A stretch of 64,000 nucleotides of DNA from positions 124,001 through 188,000 of the IMG/VR virus record IMGVR_UViG_3300042010_000106; one strand, given 5' to 3'. The notes below the pieces were generated by a model that was not told where the DNA came from, ran no database searches, and worked only from the letters and a program-made list of their open reading frames with translations. Of the stretch, positions 25,938 to 62,472 are shown piece by piece (the stretch's first letter is position 1; every line of letters starts with the position of its first letter). Made by a program: the position numbers and the translations under genes.

Positions 25938-26984
25938 TTACGGTGCTGTGATACCGCCGCCAGATTTCAGTGCGACAATACGCATGCCGGTGTTATTCGG
26001 CCCGTTCGCCAGAAGCGAAACGTAATTGCGTGGTGGATCAGCTTCGTTGTAAACCTTCAGTGGAACGTCGGTGTTTTCCGAAACAACGTCACCACTGGTG
26101 TAACCGAGCAAATCCAGTTCGTAGGTGTATGCGTAACGAGTGGTGTTCAAACGCGACGGGAACGAAACCACATAGCGGTTGCCTTCGGAAATTGCTACCT
26201 GTTCCGCAATGTTGATAATTGCGTTGTTGTATTCGGTATCAATGCCCGCATCCACTGCATCGGAAGGACGCATAACGTCAGATTCACGAACGGTGAAACG
26301 TTGAATCTTTTCAGCGGTGGAAAACATTGCAAATACTGGTGCTTTACCAGTGATAACAACGGCACCGGAAACACGATCAACCGGACGCTGTGCAACAACC
26401 CACGAAACCGATTTCGCGCCGAGGTCAGAAGTGAAGTCTTCCCAAACGCACAGAACAAAACCACGTTCTGCAATGCAGAGGTAGTAGGTCATTGGTGCAG
26501 AATCGGAAATGTCAGCGGAACCGACAACTACACGCGAAGTACGGTTAATAAAACCGTCTTCTGGTTTGGTTGGATCAGGAGCTTTATCCGCTGGCGTAGT
26601 GCCTTTGGTGTAGCGACCGCCGACAACGCCGATGGGGCCAGCCAGAACCTTTGTGGTGGTGCCTGTGGTAGTCCAAGAAAGCGAACCATCGGTACGCAAA
26701 CTTTGGTTAGAACCGAGAACCATACCGGCAGTGTGCTTATCGAAAACTTCGATTTGTACGCGCCATGGTTGCTTTGCAGGAAGTGCAGGGTTATTCAACG
26801 GGTCAACCGCAATACCTGCTTCCAACATCACTTTGAATTTGGCGCGCCCGGTTGCATCTACAGGCGGAACCCAAGGCACCGGATTGATTACAGAAAAACC
26901 GTTGTCCGTAAGGTCGGCAACAACGGCGAGCATCAGTTCACCCACGTGGGTATAACCGCTGCGACGGATGGAAATTCCAGCCAT
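25938..26984 (-). CDS. Virion structural protein, tandem paralogue 1
   Basis: High similarity to 27001..28170 (PSRLNTxRYAYTYELD). Confidence 0.8.
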   Translation of the reverse strand: MAGISIRRSGYTHVGELMLAVVADLTDNGFSVINPVPWVPPVDATGRAKFKVMLEAGIAVDPLNNPALPAKQPWRVQIEVFDKHTAGMVLGSNQSLRTDGSLSWTTTGTTTKVLAGPIGVVGGRYTKGTTPADKAPDPTKPEDGFINRTSRVVVGSADISDSAPMTYYLCIAERGFVLCVWEDFTSDLGAKSVSWVVAQRPVDRVSGAVVITGKAPVFAMFSTAEKIQRFTVRESDVMRPSDAVDAGIDTEYNNAIINIAEQVAISEGNRYVVSFPSRLNTTRYAYTYELDLLGYTSGDVVSENTDVPLKVYNEADPPRNYVSLLANGPNNTGMRIVALKSGGGITAP

Positions 26985-27000
26985 GATTTATTCCCCTTGA

Positions 27001-28170
27001 TTAAGGTGCAGGAGCAGCAATGCCGCCGCCTTCTTTGAGCGCAACAATTCGCATGCCGTTGTTGTTCAGAATGTTCGCGTGCATACCAATGTATTTACGC
27101 GGAGTTTCTTCACCGTACAGAGTTTGCGGAACTTCTGTGGTGCCACCGACAACGGTTGCAGACGTGTAGCCGATCATGTCCAGTTCGTAGGTGTATGCGT
27201 AACGCGGAGTGTTCAGGCGCGACGGATAGTTAACGATGTACTGGTTGTTTTCGGAAACACCGATTTGTTTTTTGTCGTTGATGATTGCGGTTGTATCTTT
27301 GGTATCCAGAACAGCCGAAGTAATTGTGGAAGCGTCAACCAAATCGGCTTCACGAACCACGAAACGGTTGATTTGGTTGCCCACTGCGTTAACGCAAAAT
27401 ACAGGAGCTTTACCTTCAACAACAACGATGCCTGTATCGCGATGCACAGGACGTTGAACCAGAACCCACGAAAAATCTGTACCGCTTACGTTTGTGCCGG
27501 CGCCTTGCCAAATCGACAAGTAGAAACCACGTGGAGTGATTGCCAGATAGTACGACATTGGGTAGGTCGCGCTAACGTCTTTGGTTGGATCAGTCGGGAA
27601 AACTGGTGGTGTTTCGATTTGCGATTGGGAGTTACCAACAATCGAATCAACCCAAACTTTGGTACGACGGTTGATGAAACCTTCTGTTTTGTTTTTCCAA
27701 TGCGGCTGGAAAAGACCAGCATTTTGGAAATACGGTTTGTCAGCGGTTTGCGTCAAACGATACGGGGTGTAATCTTCACCGACAATCCCGCGTGCACCGA
27801 TAATACGAACGGTGGTCGTGGTGATTTCAGTAACGGAATCGGTTGTGTAAGGCAGCGAACCGTCGTTAGGCAATGCAGTCGGCGAACCTGCAAACATACC
27901 CATTGTGGCGTTGTCAGTTACGGAAAACGCAACGCGCCACGGTTGATTCGGAGTAGCGCCGGGAATCAATGGATTCAATGGGTCAACGCTTGGCCCAGCT
28001 TCCAAAGTAACGCTGAATTTTTCAGCAGTTGCGCCAACAGGTTTTACGTAGGCGCCAGTTCCATCGACAGGGAAAATGGCTTTGAAACCATTCGCCAACA
28101 TGTCGTCAATTACAGCGAGAGTGATTTTACCGGCTGTGGTAAAACCCTCTTTGCGGATTGCAATACCCAT
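27001..28170 (-). CDS. Virion structural protein, tandem paralogue 2
   Basis: High similarity to 25938..26984. Confidence 0.8.
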   Translation of the reverse strand: MGIAIRKEGFTTAGKITLAVIDDMLANGFKAIFPVDGTGAYVKPVGATAEKFSVTLEAGPSVDPLNPLIPGATPNQPWRVAFSVTDNATMGMFAGSPTALPNDGSLPYTTDSVTEITTTTVRIIGARGIVGEDYTPYRLTQTADKPYFQNAGLFQPHWKNKTEGFINRRTKVWVDSIVGNSQSQIETPPVFPTDPTKDVSATYPMSYYLAITPRGFYLSIWQGAGTNVSGTDFSWVLVQRPVHRDTGIVVVEGKAPVFCVNAVGNQINRFVVREADLVDASTITSAVLDTKDTTAIINDKKQIGVSENNQYIVNYPSRLNTPRYAYTYELDMIGYTSATVVGGTTEVPQTLYGEETPRKYIGMHANILNNNGMRIVALKEGGGIAAPAP

Positions 28171-53371: not shown

Positions 53372-55159
53372 ATGACTGATTCAAAAGTAAACATTCCAGC
53401 CGACTATTTCCGTACTGAAGGCGAAGTACCAAATGCGGAAAGCAAACAAAGTTTTGCATCGTTGTTCGAACAGGTTGTGGGCGAAGGTGCTATTCCGCCT
53501 AGTCTCGAAATGCCTGATCACGTTGTCGTTGGTACTGAATACGCTATCGACTTGGGCGACCAAACGTTGGCAGACGGCACACCTTTGAAGGTGGTGCGTA
53601 CAACGGTTGATACGATGCTGGCGAAAAGCAGTTTGAGTCCGGGCATTTCGATTGCGGAAAACCACGACAATGTTCAAGGTATGCGCCGTCTTTCACATAG
53701 TGCGCGTATCAACATGCTGAATGAAAAGGATCGCGAAAACTTCGACGAAGTTATGACGTATATGCGCGAAGACAATCGCACACAAAGCCACATTCAACGT
53801 GTGCAAGAATCGTTGCTGGATAAAGCAGGCATTCCAACTTTCTATTCCGTCGAAGAACGTCCGCAACCGATGGAAATGTGGGGCCATTGGTTCAATCCAG
53901 TTACAGGCGAACGTGTTGATAATCCGAACGTTACCTATCGTCGGCATGAATTGGTGAACAATCAGTTTGATCGTCAATACAATGCGAACCTGCTCGACAT
54001 TTTGCAGACAGGTGAACCACGTTTGGATCGTACCGGCATCGGCACATTGATGAAGTTCGGTACGGTTCAACACCACATTGATTTGCGTGAAGGTTTCCCG
54101 GCAACTACCGGCAAGAAATTCGCGTTTGAAACAATGAAAAAAGAAACGATCAAATGGATGCTTGAAGGCAAGTTTGATTTGAAGTCCCTGAAGGATATGG
54201 GCGTCCGCATTTGGGATCAAAACGTAAAGGCTGGCACCGAAGTTTACGGTGAAATGCTCACGTGGGCGGATCGCATTCGCATGCTGACGCCGGGTCAATT
54301 GAAATCGTTCACCGATTACAAAGAAACATACTTTGAACGCGACGATGCAACCGAAAGCGGCTGGCTCGATTACGCAGAAATGAAACTGAACAATTGGGGC
54401 GTTCCTGACCGCGCTTTGATTGACGGTGATTTGGGGCCAATCTACGGTAAGCAATGGCGCGCATGGGAAGACATTCGCATTGTTGATATTGAGGATTGGG
54501 CAGAGAATTGGAAATCGTACCGCGACCGTGGCTTCGATGCGTTTCCAGAAGGCTATTTCGAATACGATGATCGACAGCATGATCGTCCTGTTCGTACACA
54601 CGCAATCATCAAACGTGAAATTGATCAGATTGCAAACATCGAAATCGCCATTCAAAACGAACTGAAATTTCACAATGGCGAAATCTACAAGCACAGCGAA
54701 GGCCGTCGAATTATTCTGACCGGGTGGAACGTTGCGCAGCTCGACGAAATGTCTTTGCCTCCTTGCCACACACTGGCGCAATGGTCGGTATCGCAAACCA
54801 AAGACGAAAACGGTCGCAATTATCTGGATTGTGAATTGTACCAACGCAGCAACGATATGTTTTTGGGTTGCCCGTTCAACGTTGCACAATACGCATTGAT
54901 TACCGAAATGCTCGCACACGCTCACGGCATGACAGCGCGTTGGTTGCACCACACAATCGGTGATGCGCACATTTACCAGAATCACATTGAAGGCGATGAT
55001 GGCGTGAAAGCTTTGCTGCAACGTCCAATCATTCACAACAGTCCGCGTCTGCATATTGCCGGTGAACACACGTCGATTCTCGATATCAAAATTGAGGATG
55101 TCACCATGTCCGGCTACGAAAGCCATCCGCCGTTTGTAGGCGTCCCAATCGCCAAGTGA
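53372..55159 (+). CDS. thyA: Thymidylate synthase with N-terminal extension and insertions
   Basis: DRTGIGT, DLGPIYGKQWR, LPPCH, YQRSNDMFLGCPFN, GDAHIYQNH. Confidence 0.95.
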   Translation: MTDSKVNIPADYFRTEGEVPNAESKQSFASLFEQVVGEGAIPPSLEMPDHVVVGTEYAIDLGDQTLADGTPLKVVRTTVDTMLAKSSLSPGISIAENHDNVQGMRRLSHSARINMLNEKDRENFDEVMTYMREDNRTQSHIQRVQESLLDKAGIPTFYSVEERPQPMEMWGHWFNPVTGERVDNPNVTYRRHELVNNQFDRQYNANLLDILQTGEPRLDRTGIGTLMKFGTVQHHIDLREGFPATTGKKFAFETMKKETIKWMLEGKFDLKSLKDMGVRIWDQNVKAGTEVYGEMLTWADRIRMLTPGQLKSFTDYKETYFERDDATESGWLDYAEMKLNNWGVPDRALIDGDLGPIYGKQWRAWEDIRIVDIEDWAENWKSYRDRGFDAFPEGYFEYDDRQHDRPVRTHAIIKREIDQIANIEIAIQNELKFHNGEIYKHSEGRRIILTGWNVAQLDEMSLPPCHTLAQWSVSQTKDENGRNYLDCELYQRSNDMFLGCPFNVAQYALITEMLAHAHGMTARWLHHTIGDAHIYQNHIEGDDGVKALLQRPIIHNSPRLHIAGEHTSILDIKIEDVTMSGYESHPPFVGVPIAK

Positions 55160-55552
55160 GTGCCTATGCAATTCCCAAAAGAAATCGCTTTTGCTGACAT
55201 TGTGACCGCACTATATTCGCATATGATGGCGGAAGCAGACTTTAGCCATCGTGGTAGTCACGGCAGATTCCACAACATGCACGAAGCAATGAAAGCCAGT
55301 AATCACGACGAAGTTTGGGAAATTGCTAAAGCCTTTGCAGACGCCGACCCATTCGCTTTGTGGACTGAACGTAAAACCATTCGTGATCTTTTTGAAATCG
55401 GTGAAAAGTGCTTCGGTTTGTGCGAGCTTGGTTTCGCACAAATCACGCGAAAAGGTTACATATTCAAGTCGTTCGAATATACCGAACACATGGACAAGGA
55501 AATGATCGTTGTTAAAAGTGGGAAGCACGTAAATGAAAAAGCTACTGCTTAG
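55160..55552 (+). CDS. Hypothetical protein
   Basis: Operon packing. Confidence 0.65.
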   Translation: MPMQFPKEIAFADIVTALYSHMMAEADFSHRGSHGRFHNMHEAMKASNHDEVWEIAKAFADADPFALWTERKTIRDLFEIGEKCFGLCELGFAQITRKGYIFKSFEYTEHMDKEMIVVKSGKHVNEKATA

Positions 55553-55946
55553 GTGGTGGCCGTTGTGGGTATGGGTCGCTTCGGTGGCCCTTATCCTTTT
55601 GGCAGCTCCATACGTTCCGTTCAAACTGTTTCAATTTCTGTTCCTGTTTTGGATATGTGTTTCTATCGTCGGTTTCATTCCTGTAGGTGCAAGCCTGCTA
55701 ACTGACATCGAAGACACGCTGCGCAGAAAGCAGGTTGAACCGCCGTTCATAGGCCCGCGTATCCGTCGAGAATTCGATTGGAAACGCATGCGTATGGTCG
55801 AGATAGACACGCAGCCGGAAATCTGTAAAGGACTACAAGACATCCACAAAACATTAGATGATTGCCACGCCAGCCTTGATCGTACGATTGAGTTAGTGCG
55901 TGAAACCAATCGTATTAAAAGGGAATTGTATGACAGCAACCCATGA
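55533..55946 (+). CDS. Membrane protein (2 TM) with coiled-coil tail
   Basis: Two hydrophobic segments. Confidence 0.65.
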   Translation: MKKLLLRWWPLWVWVASVALILLAAPYVPFKLFQFLFLFWICVSIVGFIPVGASLLTDIEDTLRRKQVEPPFIGPRIRREFDWKRMRMVEIDTQPEICKGLQDIHKTLDDCHASLDRTIELVRETNRIKRELYDSNP

Positions 55947-56274
55947 AACGTACATGTTTTCTAGCCTGAAAGGAAAGCGTGAAGAATGGTCGCCACCGCT
56001 CACGCTAACCGTTGCTGAATTTTGGGAACGTGTGCGCGTTTGCCATGCAGTGTTTATTCCAATTGCTTACTGGCGTGTGCTGATTCGACAGGACAATATT
56101 ATTCACATGGTTGCAGGCGGTGTTATGCGTGCGTCTTGCGAATACCCTGTCGGCGTGAAGAATGGCGTTCACATTTATTCCGATGCTTTCACCGGCGTTG
56201 ACGTTAAAGGCTTCGGCAATCCAATTATTTTGGTACATCCATACCAGTCACCAGCTTTCGAGGATATTACATGA
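55930..56274 (+). CDS. Small protein resembling an HK97-fold capsid A-domain
   Basis: AVFIPIAYWRVLI..VGVKNGVHIYSDAF. Confidence 0.5.
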   Translation: MTATHETYMFSSLKGKREEWSPPLTLTVAEFWERVRVCHAVFIPIAYWRVLIRQDNIIHMVAGGVMRASCEYPVGVKNGVHIYSDAFTGVDVKGFGNPIILVHPYQSPAFEDIT

Positions 56275-56987
56275 GCCTCACAACCGATTTAGAAATCTTC
56301 AGCCCCACCGATTTGGTGCGTTTGTCTGAAGGTGCTGAAAAGATTTTCATGCCGCGTGTGCAGTTCGACGTTTACATAAAAGTTGATTCAATTCGCGGTT
56401 TGTTCGAACCGTACCAGCATGAAACCATTCCCGGCCCATCGTGGAAATTCAACGGTGTGCATATCGCAATTGACGACGTATTTCTCGACGAAGGTGAACC
56501 AATCATCACGTCGTTTAAATACCCGAACTTTGTGGAGCCGAAACGCGATTATCCGTACAGCATTCACAAGCAAACGATTCCACACGTGCCGAGCATGGGC
56601 CTGTATGGCGATTGCCACCGCGTTGTAATTGCGTGCATGCTGAATAAGCGTCCTGAAGAGGTTCCGCATTTCCACGAAGGTTTACCGCCTGTGCCTGAAA
56701 GCGGTGAAGAATTCGAACGTCGTGTGGATGAATACCTTGCCACGCAAAACCTTCAGCAATTTCAGGTTCGCTATCAAGACAATTTGCGTGTGCGTGATGT
56801 TCTGCGCGAAAGCCGTGGTGCGCTCTGCATTCTCAGTGGCACCAGCGTTGGCAAAGTTGACCATAGCGTTCTGGTTCACGACAGCAAAATTGTTGTCGAT
56901 CCGAGTCCGAGCAATGTTGGTATTAACGGGCCAATGTCAAACAACTATTACAGCCTCACTTTCCTGATCCCCAAACGGTACAGCTAA
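56271..56987 (+). CDS. Capsid-A-domain-like module fused to a papain/C39-like peptidase domain
   Basis: KIFMP..FNGVHIAIDD, then KQT..GDCHRVVIACML..EVPHF..DHSVL..VDPSP. Confidence 0.55.
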   Translation: MSLTTDLEIFSPTDLVRLSEGAEKIFMPRVQFDVYIKVDSIRGLFEPYQHETIPGPSWKFNGVHIAIDDVFLDEGEPIITSFKYPNFVEPKRDYPYSIHKQTIPHVPSMGLYGDCHRVVIACMLNKRPEEVPHFHEGLPPVPESGEEFERRVDEYLATQNLQQFQVRYQDNLRVRDVLRESRGALCILSGTSVGKVDHSVLVHDSKIVVDPSPSNVGINGPMSNNYYSLTFLIPKRYS

Positions 56988-57371
56988 ATGGAACAATTCG
57001 ATACTGATTCGTTGAACCGTGCGTATATGAGTACGCTGCGTGCGCTGTTTCGAATTGAAGTCCCATCGTTTGTTGCACCGGGTAAAGGTATCGAAACACT
57101 GCGTGAAAATCTCGGCTGTTTTCTTCGTGCCCAAGGTATCGAAGCGCGCCGGGTTGAAATGCCCAACCTGAAGAAAGCTTTGCGTTATACAAAGCATGGT
57201 GCAGGCGTTTTGGAATGCACAATGGTTAACGATTTAACCTATGGCGCTATCAGCTTTGACGGGCAATTCTATGAGCATGGCAGCGCCGCAGGTTTCCACA
57301 AATACGCCGCACGCAAATACACGTGCGTTACCTTCCACAAGCAAGCAACGACAGGCACATACAATGCGTGA
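56988..57371 (+). CDS. Hypothetical protein, possible degenerate C39-like paralogue
   Basis: EVPSF and similar strand order, but no catalytic Cys/His. Confidence 0.55.
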   Translation: MEQFDTDSLNRAYMSTLRALFRIEVPSFVAPGKGIETLRENLGCFLRAQGIEARRVEMPNLKKALRYTKHGAGVLECTMVNDLTYGAISFDGQFYEHGSAAGFHKYAARKYTCVTFHKQATTGTYNA

Positions 57372-57780
57372 ATTTCATCGTGTTATTTCGGCATTCCCCG
57401 GCGTAGGTAAATCCAAAGCTGTAGAGATTGTGCCGAACCTGATCGACCTCGATTTGCCGGGTATTCCAATGGGTGAATACATCGACAAAATCAACGATCA
57501 TTTGAGCAACGATATGCGTGTGCTGGTGCCATCGTGGGAAACTCTGCGCGTGGCTATGCGTGACGCTGGGATTATCTATTCCCTCGTTTATCCGCAGCGT
57601 GATTTAAAAGCCGATTACATGATGCGTTACATTCGTCGCGGTTCGGATGAAAAGTTTCTGAATACTTTGAACAATCGTTGGGATGCGTTCATTGATTCCT
57701 GCATTGCCGATCCAATCGACGACCATTTGGTTCTCAAACAATCGCAAGCCTACCTTTCGGACTTCTTCATCTATGAATGA
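57364..57780 (+). CDS. Small P-loop NTPase/nucleotide-kinase-like protein
   Basis: VISAFPGVGKS, IDLD, LVYP..Y..RY..RG. Confidence 0.75.
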   Translation: MREFHRVISAFPGVGKSKAVEIVPNLIDLDLPGIPMGEYIDKINDHLSNDMRVLVPSWETLRVAMRDAGIIYSLVYPQRDLKADYMMRYIRRGSDEKFLNTLNNRWDAFIDSCIADPIDDHLVLKQSQAYLSDFFIYE

Positions 57781-58279
57781 CATTAGCGCAATTGCTTTTC
57801 CAACCGCAGAAGAACGGGCGCAGCGCGTGCGCGACGAATTCAACGCTGATTTCAAAAAGCGTTGGAAAGCCAAAGGCGATTGCGGCGAATTCACCAGCGA
57901 TATTTGGGCATGGCAGGAAATGCTTGAACAATCGGGTTGGGAAATCCAACTGTACGCACGGCACATTGCAGTGTTCACAACGTTCGTGGATTTCGATGCA
58001 AAGTTGATCGTCAATAACAATCCGAAAGCGTTCCATGCGCAGGGTGCGTTGCGCGAAATCGTTGATTGTATCTTTGCCGATGCAAAAGGCCGGTGGCTGT
58101 TCTATTGGGAAGAGGTTCACGACGATGCACACCGCCACGTGCGTGATGGCGACGAATACAAAGACTCCCCGTATTACATGACTGTTTGGTACAGCATGGA
58201 ATTGCGCGTGCGTGAAATGGCTGAAGGCGAAGACCTTCCGTTACCGTCCGCTGAAGAAATTGCGCCGGTGATGCTATGA
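57773..58279 (+). CDS. Hypothetical protein
   Basis: Operon packing. Confidence 0.65.
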   Translation: MNDISAIAFPTAEERAQRVRDEFNADFKKRWKAKGDCGEFTSDIWAWQEMLEQSGWEIQLYARHIAVFTTFVDFDAKLIVNNNPKAFHAQGALREIVDCIFADAKGRWLFYWEEVHDDAHRHVRDGDEYKDSPYYMTVWYSMELRVREMAEGEDLPLPSAEEIAPVML

Positions 58280-58560
58280 GTAGCCGCGACCGCAGGTCAG
58301 TGTTCCTTCTGCACTTCATTTTCAACCCGGCTGAAGTTGATTTGCCGGACGGTTTCGACGACGTGTTGATTAGCCTGAACATCTGGCCCAAACACATTGG
58401 CGGAATTGAACAGAAAAAGGCGATTCTGAATCAACAGGAATTCAACATTCGCGGCACCACGTTCTATCGGAACCCACCGAACCGGAAAGAAAGTGGCACC
58501 ATCACATTTCGTTATGCACAGGGCAACAAAACCCGTGTGACAAGGGAAGAATATGATTGA
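58276..58560 (+). CDS. Hypothetical protein
   Basis: ATGA overlap. Confidence 0.6.
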   Translation: MSSRDRRSVFLLHFIFNPAEVDLPDGFDDVLISLNIWPKHIGGIEQKKAILNQQEFNIRGTTFYRNPPNRKESGTITFRYAQGNKTRVTREEYD

Positions 58561-58909
58561 TCCTCTGATCAAAGCAGCGTTGAAAGAAATGGATCGCCAA
58601 GAAATGGATTTGTTTTCGCGCCTGCATAACACCATTACCGATAACAGCTTCGCGTACAACACAATTGAGTACGTGATTCACCGCATGGAAAATGCAAAGG
58701 TAATGTTGGTGCCACATAACCATCCGCTGCGCAGGCTGATTGAAAAGCACGTGTATTTCATGCCGCTGATTCAGCCAGAAGATCCCGGCCACATTGGTAA
58801 TTGGGATGGTGTGCCTGTCGTTGTGAATGTTCACCCTACAAAACAAACCCGGTTGGCAACTGTCTACGGTTTGAATCCTGTCGGCCACCACATTTTGGGC
58901 ACGCTATGA
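58553..58909 (+). CDS. Small protein resembling a capsid spine-helix end plus A-domain
   Basis: EMDRQEMDLF..KVMLVP..GHIGNWDGVPVVV. Confidence 0.5.
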   Translation: MIDPLIKAALKEMDRQEMDLFSRLHNTITDNSFAYNTIEYVIHRMENAKVMLVPHNHPLRRLIEKHVYFMPLIQPEDPGHIGNWDGVPVVVNVHPTKQTRLATVYGLNPVGHHILGTL

Positions 58910-59486: not shown

Positions 59487-59763
59487 GAATTTGACGATTT
59501 ACGAAATGCACGACAAGAAACGCCCGAAAGCTCCAATGGCAGAAATGCTTATGGGGTTTATGAAAAACCCGGCGTACAAAGTCAGCTTCTACGCGACTCC
59601 GCAAATGCTGCAAAAGATCATTGATGTCTACGGCCCGGTTGAGGATTTGACGCACATTCCTAAACACTATGTGCCGTCGATGATCTTCGTTCAGATTGAA
59701 CAAACGCGCTTTGTTAAAAAGCTCATGTTCGGCAACTTCTCAAAGGAAATGATTCTGCCATGA
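59476..59763 (+). CDS. Hypothetical protein
   Basis: GGAG RBS. Confidence 0.65.
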   Translation: MLDKNLTIYEMHDKKRPKAPMAEMLMGFMKNPAYKVSFYATPQMLQKIIDVYGPVEDLTHIPKHYVPSMIFVQIEQTRFVKKLMFGNFSKEMILP

Positions 59764-60269
59764 CATTTAAAGTCGGCGTTATCTTTGCGTGTGACAAAAA
59801 CGGCGGTATTGGTTTCGAAGGCCATATGCCTTGGCACGCGCCCGAGGATTTGAAGCAATTCAAAATCCGCACAATGGGCAAACCAATTATCATGGGGCGT
59901 AAGACGTGGGAAAGTTTCGAAGGCCGCATGCTTCCCGGTCGTCCGCACATTGTAATCACGTCGCAGAACATTTCGATTCCGTTGACGGGTTTGCAACAAA
60001 TGCACATTGCACGTGATTATGCCGAAGCGCTTTATCAGGCTATGCAGTACGGTGACGAAGCGTGGGTAATTGGCGGCGCGTCATTGATTGAACAGGCAAT
60101 GCGTAGTGCTTCAATGATTCGTATCACGCATATGAAACATGAATACAAAACCGATGTCCGTGTGAATAAGAAAGCGTTGGAACGCGTTTATGCAAACCGT
60201 GTTTCTGCGCATGAAATCTGGTCGTTGGAAACTGAACAGTTCACAGTCACTGAATACCAGATGAACTAA
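59760..60269 (+). CDS. folA: Dihydrofolate reductase
   Basis: GIGFEGHMPWHAPEDLKQFK..T..IIMGRKTWES..LPGR..WVIGG. Confidence 0.95.
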   Translation: MTFKVGVIFACDKNGGIGFEGHMPWHAPEDLKQFKIRTMGKPIIMGRKTWESFEGRMLPGRPHIVITSQNISIPLTGLQQMHIARDYAEALYQAMQYGDEAWVIGGASLIEQAMRSASMIRITHMKHEYKTDVRVNKKALERVYANRVSAHEIWSLETEQFTVTEYQMN

Positions 60270-60377: not shown

Positions 60378-60608
60378 ATGAAAGCAATTAAGGAAACCGC
60401 TGTAGTGTTCGAACATGTTGTTGTAGTCGAGTACATAGCACCGCAGAACTTCTACAGCATCACGATTGACGATGTTTGTTATACGGACTTGAAGGGCAGC
60501 GGCGCTCTTAACGATGTACACCGCCGAGCCGCACGCAAGGTTCTGGACATGATCGAAGAGCGCACCGGCTACACCGCAGCAATACAGACGGCCTACAAGC
60601 TCCTGTAA
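60378..60608 (+). CDS. Monocistronic small hypothetical protein
   Basis: AGGA RBS, own promoter and terminator. Confidence 0.7.
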   Translation: MKAIKETAVVFEHVVVVEYIAPQNFYSITIDDVCYTDLKGSGALNDVHRRAARKVLDMIEERTGYTAAIQTAYKLL

Positions 60609-60681: not shown

Positions 60682-60945
60682 TTAGGCGTAGTGCTGTTTC
60701 AGTATGGCGAGCTTGCGTTGCGTCATGCGTAACTGAGTCATTAGCGCACGGGTGTTAGGCGAATCATCGTCTGTAGCTTCCAATTGCTTTTTAAGTCTCA
60801 GAATTTCATCACGAAGGGCCTGAACTTGTTCCCGGTATCCTGAAGCCATTGCAGCGCGAGCGCCCGCATAAATCGACTTCGGGTGTTTCTTTAGATACTT
60901 TCTTTTTGCAGATGATGCCTTACCGTGAAACCAATGCTTAGCCAT
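60682..60945 (-). CDS. Basic protein with YLKxHPxSxY motif and coiled coil
   Basis: WF..AS..KYLKKHPKSIY. Confidence 0.7.
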   Translation of the reverse strand: MAKHWFHGKASSAKRKYLKKHPKSIYAGARAAMASGYREQVQALRDEILRLKKQLEATDDDSPNTRALMTQLRMTQRKLAILKQHYA

Positions 60946-60947
60946 GA

Positions 60948-61406
60948 TTACGCTGCCTTACGTTTCGCGCCAAGTTTGACGGAACGGTCGTGGGCTTTCT
61001 GGCCCTCTTTCCGCACTTTCTCATATACGGATGTCAGATGCTTAACTTGCGCATCGTCACCGCGTCCCTTAGCCTTTTGAATGGCTGTTTTTACTTTGAC
61101 CATTTTCAACGCATATTGCGCTTTGAGTTTGGTCAATGCCGTGTCGGCTTTAACTTTCCCATCCCGCGACATTTTGCGATTGTGCTTACTGTCCTTAACT
61201 TCGGTCAGTTTGCCACCTTTAGTGCTGTGCGTGATACGGCCCATCTTACCCCAACGTCCGTACCCCATACTTTCCAAACCGAGTTTACGCGCACGGTTTG
61301 CAACTGCACTAACCTTTGGCTTTTTCTTGCCAGATTTCTTTGCAACTTTTTTCACAGCAGGTTTAGGCTTTGCACTAGCGACCCGCTTCGGTTTGGTCGT
61401 GGCCAT
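60948..61406 (-). CDS. Very Lys-rich, histone-H1-like protein
   Basis: K/R/A-rich; ARKLGLESMGYGRWGK..ITH..GGKL module. Confidence 0.7.
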   Translation of the reverse strand: MATTKPKRVASAKPKPAVKKVAKKSGKKKPKVSAVANRARKLGLESMGYGRWGKMGRITHSTKGGKLTEVKDSKHNRKMSRDGKVKADTALTKLKAQYALKMVKVKTAIQKAKGRGDDAQVKHLTSVYEKVRKEGQKAHDRSVKLGAKRKAA

Positions 61407-61764
61407 TTAGGAATCCTGTTAATTCAGTTGTGATTACGTGGAGCAGATTAATACTGTCCGCAATTGCTACCGTGTACAAACGTCGCACAACCACTTTCGT
61501 GTTCACGCGCTGAATGACGTATATTTCGGTAGTGTCTTTGAAGTCAATGTGCACAAACAATTCCAATCCATATTTCTGAATTGAGAACGTCGCACGTGTA
61601 TACGCGTCTGCTTCCAAAAAGAAGTCGCGAAGTTCCCCGCGTGGAACCAGTGTGCACGTGTAATTCACACACCAGCCGGGGAACTCCTGTTCAATCAGGC
61701 GCGATATATTGTGCATTGAATTCGTGATCAATATATCGGGTTGAGCGGTTACGTTGACAAGCAT
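61375..61764 (-). CDS. Hypothetical protein
   Basis: TAATG coupling, GAGG RBS. Confidence 0.65.
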   Translation of the reverse strand: MLVNVTAQPDILITNSMHNISRLIEQEFPGWCVNYTCTLVPRGELRDFFLEADAYTRATFSIQKYGLELFVHIDFKDTTEIYVIQRVNTKVVVRRLYTVAIADSINLLHVITTELTGFLNGHDQTEAGR

Positions 61765-62189
61765 TAGCTGCGCCTCAAATTCATAACACGTTGAGTTGTG
61801 GCGCGCATACTGTCGCGTACCCCTTTGATCCTGTCCTGCAATGCTTTCTTGCGTGCGGCCCACGTTACAGCTTTCTTTGGATCTTTTGGCCGTGGTGGAA
61901 ACGTTGCCAACTGAGAACGAAGTTTAGACATTTGCTGTCCTTTTTTCATCTTCGCATCAGTCGTGCTTTTAATCGTTCGATTTGTCTTCACGTCTGCACG
62001 ATGTTCCGCGTGTTGACGTTTGGACGGCGGGGCAGTTTTCGTGCTGGCACCATCGAGACTCAAGCCCGCTTTCTTGTAGCGTGAATTCGGGTGACTCTTC
62101 AGGTATTTCGCTTGCTGATTCTTACTCGCACGATTCAGAAACCAATTGCCTTTCGGTTTGGTCTTAGCTTTCTTCGGTTTTAGGGCCAT
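61764..62189 (-). CDS. Basic protein with YLKxHPxSxY motif
   Basis: WF..AS..QAKYLKSHPNSRY; GGAGG RBS. Confidence 0.7.
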   Translation of the reverse strand: MALKPKKAKTKPKGNWFLNRASKNQQAKYLKSHPNSRYKKAGLSLDGASTKTAPPSKRQHAEHRADVKTNRTIKSTTDAKMKKGQQMSKLRSQLATFPPRPKDPKKAVTWAARKKALQDRIKGVRDSMRATTQRVMNLRRS

Positions 62190-62472
62190 CTGGCGTCCCT
62201 CCCCGCGCACGTTCGTTATCCAGAATACGTGCAAACGATTCACCAAAGAATCCGTATTTTGGATCGCGATATTTGCTAACGTCGATACGATTCCTTTGAT
62301 TCGGAATCAATTCGTCAGCAGTGAAATCTGGTTCCGTATCAGGCATTACAAACGGCGGGAACATCTTGGCTGTGCGGCGTTCCGCAATGGCCTGCAATTC
62401 CTGTGTGGCACCTTTGAAAATGTCTTTGAAATCTTTTGGTTCCTCGCTGGCAAGGCAGAGCATGATTTTCAT
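62164..62472 (-). CDS. Hypothetical protein
   Basis: ATGA overlap. Confidence 0.65.
   Translation of the reverse strand: MKIMLCLASEEPKDFKDIFKGATQELQAIAERRTAKMFPPFVMPDTEPDFTADELIPNQRNRIDVSKYRDPKYGFFGESFARILDNERARGGTPDGPKTEES

What the first reader, a model, noticed from the sequence alone, without database searches (positions are those of the whole stretch)
55930..58909. Family of stand-alone capsid-A-domain-like proteins outside the structural region: candidate capsid decoys
Seen: three ORFs (55930, the N-half of 56271, and 58553) share one layout. It runs helix, hydrophobic strand ending in Pro (AVFIP / KIFMP / VMLVP), helix, (F)xP, then G-x2-3-G-V-x-I/V (VGVKNGVHIYSDAF / WKFNGVHIAIDD / IGNWDGVPVVV). 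Known: this order matches the axial (A) domain of HK97-fold major capsid proteins ('..ivmnP..w..L..G.l.G.pVv.s'), and several immune sensors (CapRel, Lit) are triggered by capsid protein. Inference: these 110-120 aa modules lack the E-loop and P-domain, so they cannot build a shell, and they sit in the thyA-folA operon. They could be capsid-derived decoys or inhibitors of capsid-sensing defence, or interfere with rival phage or satellite capsid assembly. The similarity was judged by eye.
Basis: partly seen in the sequence, partly recalled or inferred. Interest (0 to 1): 0.8.

Follow-up and report, generated by a model that had tools for sequence, protein, structure and literature searches.

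The report
Capsid A-domain-like modules beside thyA
Three small genes in a jumbo phage's thymidylate-synthase operon belong to one fast-evolving family of about 85-residue modules that look like the central (A) domain of the phage's capsid protein; the family is real, the capsid link is moderately supported, and what the modules do is untested.

Summary
The window comes from a roughly 312-kb Lu11/PaBG-group jumbo phage. The three ORFs are real, conserved genes: P1 55930-56274, P2 56271-56987 and P3 58553-58909.

Direct pairwise comparison shows almost nothing. Relatives from other Lu11-like phages supply the link. A roughly 238-aa protein of the Lu11 gp0219 type is a tandem of two such modules. 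P1 matches its N module (hhalign 90%) and P3 its C module (89%).

In leave-one-family-out profile comparisons, each family finds the rest: P3 95.5%, P1 88.3%, N-half of P2 65.7%.

The capsid link is moderate:
- A 22-module profile built without capsid rows aligns in register with the A domain of the group's major capsid proteins (hhalign 39-56%, E 1e-4 to 3e-4, z about 8.5 against shuffles).
- It aligns likewise with the phage's own capsid protein, residues 238-295.

No Pfam, PHROG or PDB sequence hit exists. The decoy function is untested, and the modules' extreme divergence from the conserved capsid protein argues against it. The closest known kind is the archaeal "A-domain encapsulins" (DUF1884).

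The parts
55930..56274 (+). P1, a 114-aa single-module protein. The module is about residues 27-110 (56008-56259).
   Evidence: Gene call on the relative L006. Homologues P0009-12 and divergent ones in L044 and L046. hhalign to the gp0219 N module 90.2% and to all other modules 88.3%. Not folded.
56271..56564 (+). N-half of P2 (residues 1-98). It is a module fused upstream of a second domain and is the weakest member of the family.
56550..56987 (+). C-half of P2 (residues 94-238). It belongs to the phrog_5845 family and is a putative Cys-His-Asp thiol hydrolase.
   Evidence: phrog_5845 at 4e-29. The domain stands alone in Lu11 gp0220 and in many siphophages. Gln, G-D-C, His and Asp are invariant in six homologues at 29-37% identity. 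No Pfam or PDB profile hit.
58553..58909 (+). P3, a 118-aa single-module protein. The module is about residues 30-118 (58640-58906).
   Evidence: AF2 pLDDT 87.7, pTM 0.81. Homologues lie in the same cassette position in Lu11 (gp0218, hhalign 97.7%), in L002-L005 and in L044-L051. hhalign to the other modules 95.5%.
53372..55159 (+). thyA (595 aa), the first gene of the cassette. It is context, not part of the family.
   Evidence: tblastn 53% to Lu11/HRDY3 thymidylate synthase over residues 196-594. PF00303 on the relative.
59760..60269 (+). folA (DHFR, 169 aa), near the 3' end of the cassette (a 76-aa + strand ORF, 60378-60608, follows it). It is context.
   Evidence: PF00186 on relatives. Alignment A6.

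Best explanation
What it is. P1, P3 and probably the N-half of P2 are members of one lineage-specific family of about 85-residue alpha/beta modules. The family is found in Lu11/PaBG-group jumbo phages.

The module runs helix, buried strand ending in Pro, helix, short strand (F-x-P), a Gly-rich beta-hairpin (G-x-[IVL]-G-x3-G-[IV]-x-[IV]-x-[TS]-D-x-F in its fullest form), then a final strand.

It occurs in three architectures:
- alone (P1, P3, Lu11 gp0218, PaBG gp235);
- as a tandem pair (Lu11 gp0219 type, PaBG gp232);
- fused to a putative thiol hydrolase (P2).

It is always encoded next to thyA. It is most likely a stand-alone derivative, or at least a fold-mate, of the axial (A) domain of the HK97-fold major capsid protein, without N-arm, E-loop or P domain. 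It therefore cannot tile a shell.

How it most likely works (inference, not shown). A domains make the contacts around the capsomer axis. A free module would therefore either self-associate or dock on capsid protein. On this reading the modules are soluble, non-structural binders that modulate or exploit capsid-protein contacts, of this phage or of a competitor. In P2 the module would bring a thiol hydrolase to that partner.

Fast divergence and shuffling of architectures point to an accessory, conflict-type role rather than a housekeeping one.

My confidence is about 0.85 for the family, about 0.6-0.7 for the A-domain relationship and no more than 0.25 for the capsid-binding mechanism.
For: Family:
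- hhalign 90%, 89% and 69% through the tandem protein.
- Leave-one-out 95.5%, 88.3% and 65.7%.
- jackhmmer from P3 recruits the tandem family.
- Motif specificity 11 of 13 hits.
- The multiple alignment A8 is co-linear.

A-domain link by sequence:
- The module profile A9, built without capsid rows, against 16 capsid proteins gives hhalign 55.6%, E 1.2e-4, score 32.4.
- The null from 200 column shuffles has mean 12.0, sd 2.4 and maximum 22.5.
- DHFR and P2C controls give 0.3%.
- With the phage's own capsid protein (L138) first, the result is 39.1%, E 3.1e-4, at residues 238-295.
- Against 7,672 decoy ORFs, the first non-family HMM hits are capsid proteins, E 0.009-0.012.
- Nearly every family-versus-capsid comparison has its best local alignment on the same capsid stretch, roughly residues 240-320. 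P2N is the exception in three of its four runs.

A-domain link by fold:
- The ESM-Atlas nearest cluster to P3 (0.93, 175 shared features) has a model that matches Gp23/HK97 capsids at TM 0.64-0.72.
- The AF2 P3 model's top atlas shape matches are Phage_capsid, Gp13-like and Gp23, TM 0.46-0.53 over 90-100 residues.
- For P2's N-half, about 24 of the top 50 VIA rows are HK97-fold shells, including HK97 residues 251-374.

Accessory character:
- The P3 module is 21% identical to Lu11 gp0218.
- Against Lu11, the capsid protein is 73% identical, ThyA 53% and DHFR 44%.

Linkage to thyA holds in PaBG, where folA lies elsewhere.
Against: - No Pfam, PHROG or PDB sequence hit for any member or profile.
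- Each single family against the capsid protein gives only 0.1-10.7%.
- The best unrelated decoys in the HMM search reach E 0.03-0.04, close to the capsid hits.
- Foldseek against the PDB has nothing at E <= 0.001.
- The P2 model is poor (pLDDT 43.9), and P1 was not folded.
- AF2 may reproduce a capsid-like shape from motif resemblance alone.
- Nothing here bears on binding partners, timing of expression or presence in virions.
Confidence: 0.5

Rival explanations
1. Enzyme-partner model. As with Family 4 'A-domain encapsulins', the modules associate with the metabolic enzyme encoded beside them. Here that enzyme is ThyA, which carries an unusual roughly 190-residue N-terminal extension. The modules would stabilise it or organise a thymidylate-synthesis complex.
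For: In archaea, stand-alone A domains of about 100 aa sit in two-gene operons with GAPDH, DeoC, OsmC or hydrogenase, and GAPDH forms a stable complex with its A-domain protein (PMC8346489). The modules stay next to thyA in three diverged lineages, including PaBG where folA is elsewhere. The ThyA N-extension has no match in Lu11.
Against: The modules diverge far faster than ThyA or DHFR (21% against 53% and 44%). Their number and architecture change between close phages, which is unusual for an obligate enzyme partner. There is no PF08967 match. 2PK8 is not among the top VIA rows. Many unrelated ORFans share the cassette.
Confidence: 0.18
2. Decoy or inhibitor model. The modules mimic capsid protein to soak up or blunt capsid-sensing defence, or they poison the capsid assembly of rival phages or satellites.
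For: An A-domain-like fold without shell-forming parts. Fast evolution and architectural shuffling typical of conflict genes. Capsid proteins are known triggers of bacterial immunity (PMC9712102, listed).
Against: Identity to the phage's own capsid protein is too low for BLASTP to detect, whereas known direct sensors respond to specific capsid surfaces. No PADLOC or anti-defence evidence was sought or found. The full-text search found no use of 'capsid decoy' or 'capsid mimic'. Expression timing is unknown.
Confidence: 0.12
3. The modules are ordinary small alpha/beta sandwich proteins of the L7Ae/L30e/Pelota-C type, possibly RNA-binding. The resemblance to the A domain is a shared simple beta-alpha-beta-beta arrangement rather than common descent.
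Against: No PF01248 or any other Pfam match. The second half of the module is a beta-hairpin plus strand, not the alternating alpha/beta of L7Ae. The sequence profile aligns with the capsid A domain and not with the controls. P2's N-half matches capsids and not L7Ae. The ESM feature and shape searches rank capsids first.
Confidence: 0.15

Closest known systems
A (axial) domain of HK97-fold major capsid proteins, including this phage's own capsid protein (L138:201-1280, 360 aa, about 170 kb away on the 312-kb contig)
   Different: There is no N-arm, E-loop, spine helix or P domain. Identity is under 20%. The modules are encoded in a nucleotide-metabolism cassette, not the head module. They occur as tandem and enzyme-fused forms. 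P3 adds N-terminal helices and a C-terminal helix.
Family 4 'A-domain encapsulins' (DUF1884, PF08967; structure 2PK8) of Thermococcales and Rhodothermus-type Bacteroidetes (PMC8346489)
   Same: They are proteins of about 100 aa that consist only of an HK97-type A domain and are encoded beside metabolic enzymes. Their function is also unknown.
   Different: There is no sequence match to PF08967, and 2PK8 is not among the top structural hits. Those proteins are cellular and thermophilic, whereas these are from a jumbo phage. Here there are several diverged copies per genome, tandem and fused architectures, and rapid divergence.
L7Ae/L30e-like alpha/beta sandwich proteins
   Different: There is no sequence-family match. 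The beta-hairpin replaces a helix. No K-turn-binding motifs were identified. The N-half of P2 does not match them.

Membership tests
HK97-fold capsid protein, A-domain core | Profile-level sequence similarity to capsid A domains in the correct register | tested here: inconclusive
   Merged module profile against capsid proteins: hhalign 55.6% (E 1.2e-4, z about 8.5 against shuffles), and 39.1% with the phage's own capsid protein first. HMMER E 0.009 against 7,672 decoys. Single families reach only 0.1-10.7%.
HK97-fold capsid protein, A-domain core | Three-dimensional superposition on an A domain | tested here: inconclusive
HK97-fold capsid protein (as a shell-forming protein) | Presence of N-arm, E-loop, spine helix and P domain | tested here: not met
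   The proteins are 114-118 aa, or a 98-aa N-half. The alignment to capsid proteins covers only about residues 238-310 of 360. They are not capsid proteins.
Family 4 A-domain encapsulins (DUF1884) | Match to Pfam PF08967 | tested here: not met
   No Pfam hit at E <= 10 for any of 30 family members scanned.
Family 4 A-domain encapsulins (DUF1884) | Structural match to 2PK8 | tested here: not met
   2PK8 is absent from the 50 best VIA rows for both models. The tool warns that weak matches can be missed.
Family 4 A-domain encapsulins (DUF1884) | Conserved operon with an enzyme partner | tested here: inconclusive
   The modules are linked to thyA in the window, Lu11 and PaBG. They are separated from it by unrelated ORFs, and the gene order varies.
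L7Ae/L30e family | Match to Pfam PF01248 or a related family | tested here: not met
Papain-like/C39-like thiol peptidases (C-half of P2 only) | Invariant catalytic Cys and His (plus Asp/Asn and an oxyanion Gln) | tested here: met
   Gln, G-D-C, His and Asp are invariant in six homologues at 29-37% identity.
Papain-like/C39-like thiol peptidases (C-half of P2 only) | Profile or fold match to a known peptidase family | tested here: not met
Anti-defence decoys of capsid sensors | Binds or neutralises a capsid-sensing immune protein | not testable with these tools
   This needs co-expression and plating assays.

The most novel reading that the evidence does not exclude
Jumbo phages of the Lu11/PaBG group carry a diversifying set of capsid-derived A-domain mimics, single, tandem and hydrolase-fused. 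The phages would use them in conflicts: masking or decoying capsid-sensing immunity, or capping the capsomers of competing phages and satellites. This would be a new class of counter-defence or interference protein that arose by exaptation of a structural domain.
Probability: 0.15. Interest if true: 0.85.

Novelty: new variant of a known kind. Interest (0 to 1): 0.6.

Why it matters
Stand-alone HK97 A domains are so far described only as cellular DUF1884 proteins of unknown role. A second, unrelated-by-sequence family inside phage genomes would show that the capsid A domain has been exapted repeatedly as a free module. This family is multi-copy, fast-evolving and sometimes fused to a hydrolase.

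It gives a tractable system, with small soluble proteins and a Pseudomonas-type host. That system could show what a free A domain does: self-assembly, capsid binding, enzyme partnering or immune evasion. The family also gives names to several ORFans in Lu11, PaBG and dozens of metagenomic jumbo phages.

Tried and rejected
Searches that found nothing:
- Pairwise BLASTP, and first-round hhalign on shallow alignments, between the three proteins.
- Megablast to phages, and tblastn of P1 and P3 to phages.
- Pfam, PHROG and PDB-sequence searches of single proteins and of profiles A1, A3, A4, A7, A9 and A11.
- Foldseek of the P3 model against AFDB clusters and Swiss-Prot.
- BLASTP of the phage's own capsid protein against the three proteins, no hit with E below 2.

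Searches with thin yield:
- The 1.84-billion-protein HMM search with the P3 profile gave only three distant relatives.
- The IMG/VR scan with the P3 alignment returned only the window's own genome.
- A capsid A-domain HMM against six-frame decoys did not lift the family above noise.

Things that did not work:
- AF2 of P2 with seven close sequences was poor. I should have added diverse phrog_5845 homologues. That used the last folding job, so P1 was never folded.
- The Lu11 'middle/late promoter' word upstream of thyA is not enriched in the window, with 4 hits against 2 expected. Expression timing therefore stays unknown.
- The PaBG virion proteome lists only 14 abundant proteins and says nothing about the modules.

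Idea rejected: a His-Glu-His metal site in P3. Only one of the two His residues is kept in the wider family.
Full report
**Origin of the window.** GC content is 47-50%. There is no near-identical phage in GenBank. ThyA is 53% identical to that of the Pseudomonas jumbo phages Lu11 and HRDY3. The gene order matches Lu11: baseplate gp6/gp25 genes lie divergent from thyA, followed by small ORFs and then folA. P3 and DHFR are 100% identical on IMG/VR contig 3300042010_000106, which is 312,325 bp. The window is therefore part of a roughly 312-kb Lu11/PaBG-group ("Lupandier", PMC7412058) jumbo phage. The rest of the window carries tail genes, including two sheath paralogues, baseplate and fibres. It does not carry the capsid gene.

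**The genes.** On the + strand, thyA (53372-55159) is followed by twelve small genes and then folA (59760-60269).
- The finding concerns P1 (55930-56274, 114 aa), P2 (56271-56987, 238 aa) and P3 (58553-58909, 118 aa).
- A gene caller made the same calls on a 312.5-kb relative.
- Each protein has metagenomic homologues at 65-93% identity. These are real, conserved genes.
- The C-half of P2 (residues 94-229) is phrog_5845 (4e-29). That domain stands alone in Lu11 gp0220 and in many siphophages.

**First pass on mutual similarity: negative.**
- BLASTP gives nothing for P1/P3, E 0.038 for P1/P2N and E 2.1 for P2N/P3.
- hhalign on the shallow family alignments A1-A3 gives 6.5%, 0.8% and 0.8%.
- Pfam, PHROG and PDB-sequence searches are empty.
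- An exhaustive HMM search of 1.84 billion representatives with the P3 profile found only three distant relatives, P0019-21.
- All three lie in thyA-folA cassettes or on short fragments of such phages.
- Lu11 gp0218, at the same cassette position, is a P3 homologue (hhalign 97.7%).

**Intermediates change the picture.**
- Anchoring on DHFR, I fetched eleven Lu11-like cassettes from IMG/VR, L042-L052.
- HMMs of P1 and P3 both hit a roughly 238-aa protein encoded just upstream of the P3 homologue in those phages, the Lu11 gp0219 type. P1 hits it at E 0.0014 and P3 at E 4e-4, among 1,604 six-frame segments.
- jackhmmer from P3 recruits this family, with two matching stretches per protein. It is a tandem of two modules.
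- With the enlarged alignments, hhalign gives P1 to N module 90.2% (E 1.5e-6, 75 columns), P3 to C module 89.1% (E 2.3e-6) and N to C module 68.6%.
- Leaving each family out of a 22-module alignment (A9) and comparing it with the rest gives P3 95.5%, P1 88.3% and P2N 65.7%.
- The equivalent HMMER test is weaker. The best P3-family member reaches E 9e-5, but the window's own P3 is at 1.4, P1 at 2.3 and P2 at 0.031.
- PaBG has two further members beside its thyA, gp235 and the gp232 tandem type. Its folA is gene 40, elsewhere in the genome.
The family is solid for P1 and P3 and probable for P2N.

**Relation to the capsid A domain: sequence.**
- The group's capsid protein is an HK97-fold protein (PaBG gene 80; PMC7412058).
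- I collected capsid proteins of the group. I also obtained the window phage's own capsid protein, L138:201-1280. It is 360 aa and 73% identical to the Lu11 capsid protein.
- Single families match it only weakly (0.1-10.7%). Even so, nearly every comparison has its best alignment on one capsid stretch, roughly residues 240-320, which is the A-domain strand-helix-hairpin-strand region. P2N is the exception in three of its four runs.
- A partial gene on L004 shows the resemblance most plainly, at tblastn E 0.087.
- The merged module profile, built without any capsid row, aligns to 16 capsid proteins at 55.6%, E 1.2e-4, score 32.4. Two hundred column-shuffled nulls give mean 12.0, sd 2.4 and maximum 22.5. 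DHFR and P2C controls give 0.3%.
- With the phage's own capsid protein first, the result is 39.1%, E 3.1e-4, modules 18-76 on capsid residues 238-295.
- In an HMM search of 7,672 decoys, the first non-family hits are capsid proteins (E 0.009-0.012). Unrelated decoys follow at E 0.03-0.04.
- MAFFT aligns modules and capsid segments co-linearly (A8).

**Relation to the capsid A domain: fold.**
- P3 with 12 sequences gives a confident model (pLDDT 87.7, pTM 0.81) with the element order helix-helix-strand-helix-strand-helix-strand-strand-strand-helix.
- Foldseek finds nothing significant in the PDB or AFDB. In BFVD it finds only a 110-aa protein that is probably Lu11 gp0218.
- The ESM-Atlas shape search ranks Phage_capsid, Gp13-like and Gp23 clusters first, at TM 0.46-0.53 over 90-100 residues.
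- The Atlas cluster nearest to P3 by language-model features scores 0.93 with 175 shared features, and may be P3's own cluster. Its model matches capsids at TM 0.64-0.72.
- P2 folded poorly (pLDDT 43.9; N-half 56-73).
- The Atlas shape search repeats this result.
- Taken together, sequence and fold evidence make an A-domain relationship more likely than not. I put it at 0.6-0.7. It is not proven.

**What the modules are not.**
- They lack everything outside the A domain, so they are not capsid proteins.
- They do not match DUF1884/PF08967, and 2PK8 is not among the structural hits. They are therefore not members of the Family 4 "A-domain encapsulins". That family is nevertheless the closest known kind: proteins of about 100 aa that are a bare A domain, encoded next to enzymes (PMC8346489).
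- They do not match the L7Ae Pfam family.

**Function.** Nothing was shown directly. The observations that bear on it are these.
1. The modules are persistently linked to thyA in three diverged lineages.
2. They diverge very fast. The P3 module is 21% identical to Lu11 gp0218. Against Lu11, the capsid protein is 73% identical, ThyA 53% and DHFR 44%.
3. Their number and architecture vary: single, tandem and fused.
4. In P2 the module is fused to a domain with invariant Gln, Cys, His and Asp, which has no known family.

From established knowledge, A domains make the intracapsomer contacts. My preferred reading is therefore a soluble module that self-associates or docks on capsid protein and acts in an accessory, conflict-type role.

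The enzyme-partner reading has the thyA linkage and the archaeal precedent in its favour. The decoy reading is possible, but the modules' remoteness from the conserved capsid protein weakens it. I found no paper that uses the terms "capsid decoy" or "capsid mimic".

**Verdict.**
- The structural interpretation is moderately supported.
- The functional interpretation is untested.
- I rate this a new variant of a known kind (a stand-alone HK97 A-domain protein) in a new setting.

Noticed in passing
window 53372-53960: ThyA is 595 aa. Only residues 196-594 align with Lu11, PaBG and other phage thymidylate synthases. The first roughly 190 residues are an unexplained N-terminal extension, which is kept in the 312-kb relative.
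   Followed up: no
window 56550-56984; L001:4995-5447; L163-L166: The phrog_5845 domain (C-half of P2, Lu11 gp0220 and proteins of Xylophilus, Caulobacter, Microcystis and Stenotrophomonas phages) has invariant Gln, G-D-C, His and Asp. This looks like an undescribed thiol hydrolase family. There is no Pfam or PDB match.
   Followed up: partly
L048:6074-6787, L044:6014-6754, L046:6014-6820, L001:5447-6163; L122:8401-9087 (-) and L122:9610-9984 (-): Lu11 gp0219-type proteins are tandem duplications of the module. PaBG gp232 and gp235, next to PaBG thyA, carry the same motifs: V-L-F-L-L-V-S...G-V-A-G-V-L-N-G-K-V-V-F-T-D-A-F, and I-I-G-E-L-N-G-H-P-V-I-E.
   Followed up: yes
L044:12878-13378 (-), L046:12552-13028 (-), L001:9079-9561 (-): The P3 profile weakly hits roughly 160-aa minus-strand ORFs downstream of folA in Lu11-like phages (E 0.002-0.8). 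These may be further diverged members. No equivalent was detected in the window.
   Followed up: no
window 60682-62246 (-): Three consecutive minus-strand ORFs (87, 152 and 160 aa) are extremely Lys/Ala-rich and basic, resembling histone-like or internal-head proteins. They were seen in the ORF list only.
   Followed up: no
window 25938-28170 (-): Two adjacent tail-sheath paralogues (348 and 389 aa, phrog_12249 at 1e-104 and 1e-119). This recalls the two-component sheath reported for PaBG (reference list of PMC7412058).
   Followed up: no
window 58553-58906 (ESM Atlas neighbours): Two large Atlas clusters of roughly 90-aa, mostly viral hypothetical proteins (355 and 94 members) sit at feature score 0.91-0.92 from P3. 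Fragment clusters of GP7, P2-type capsid and SrpI encapsulin sit at 0.81-0.83. Similar modules may be far more widespread than HMMER shows.
   Followed up: no
window 57364-57780: The 138-aa gene between P2 and P3 belongs to phrog_4182 (3e-36), a family of unknown function. Neighbouring cassette genes at 55160-55552, 56988-57371, 57773-58279 and 58276-58560 have no family at all. The gene at 55533-55946 encodes a protein with a hydrophobic N-terminus that looks membrane-spanning.
   Followed up: no
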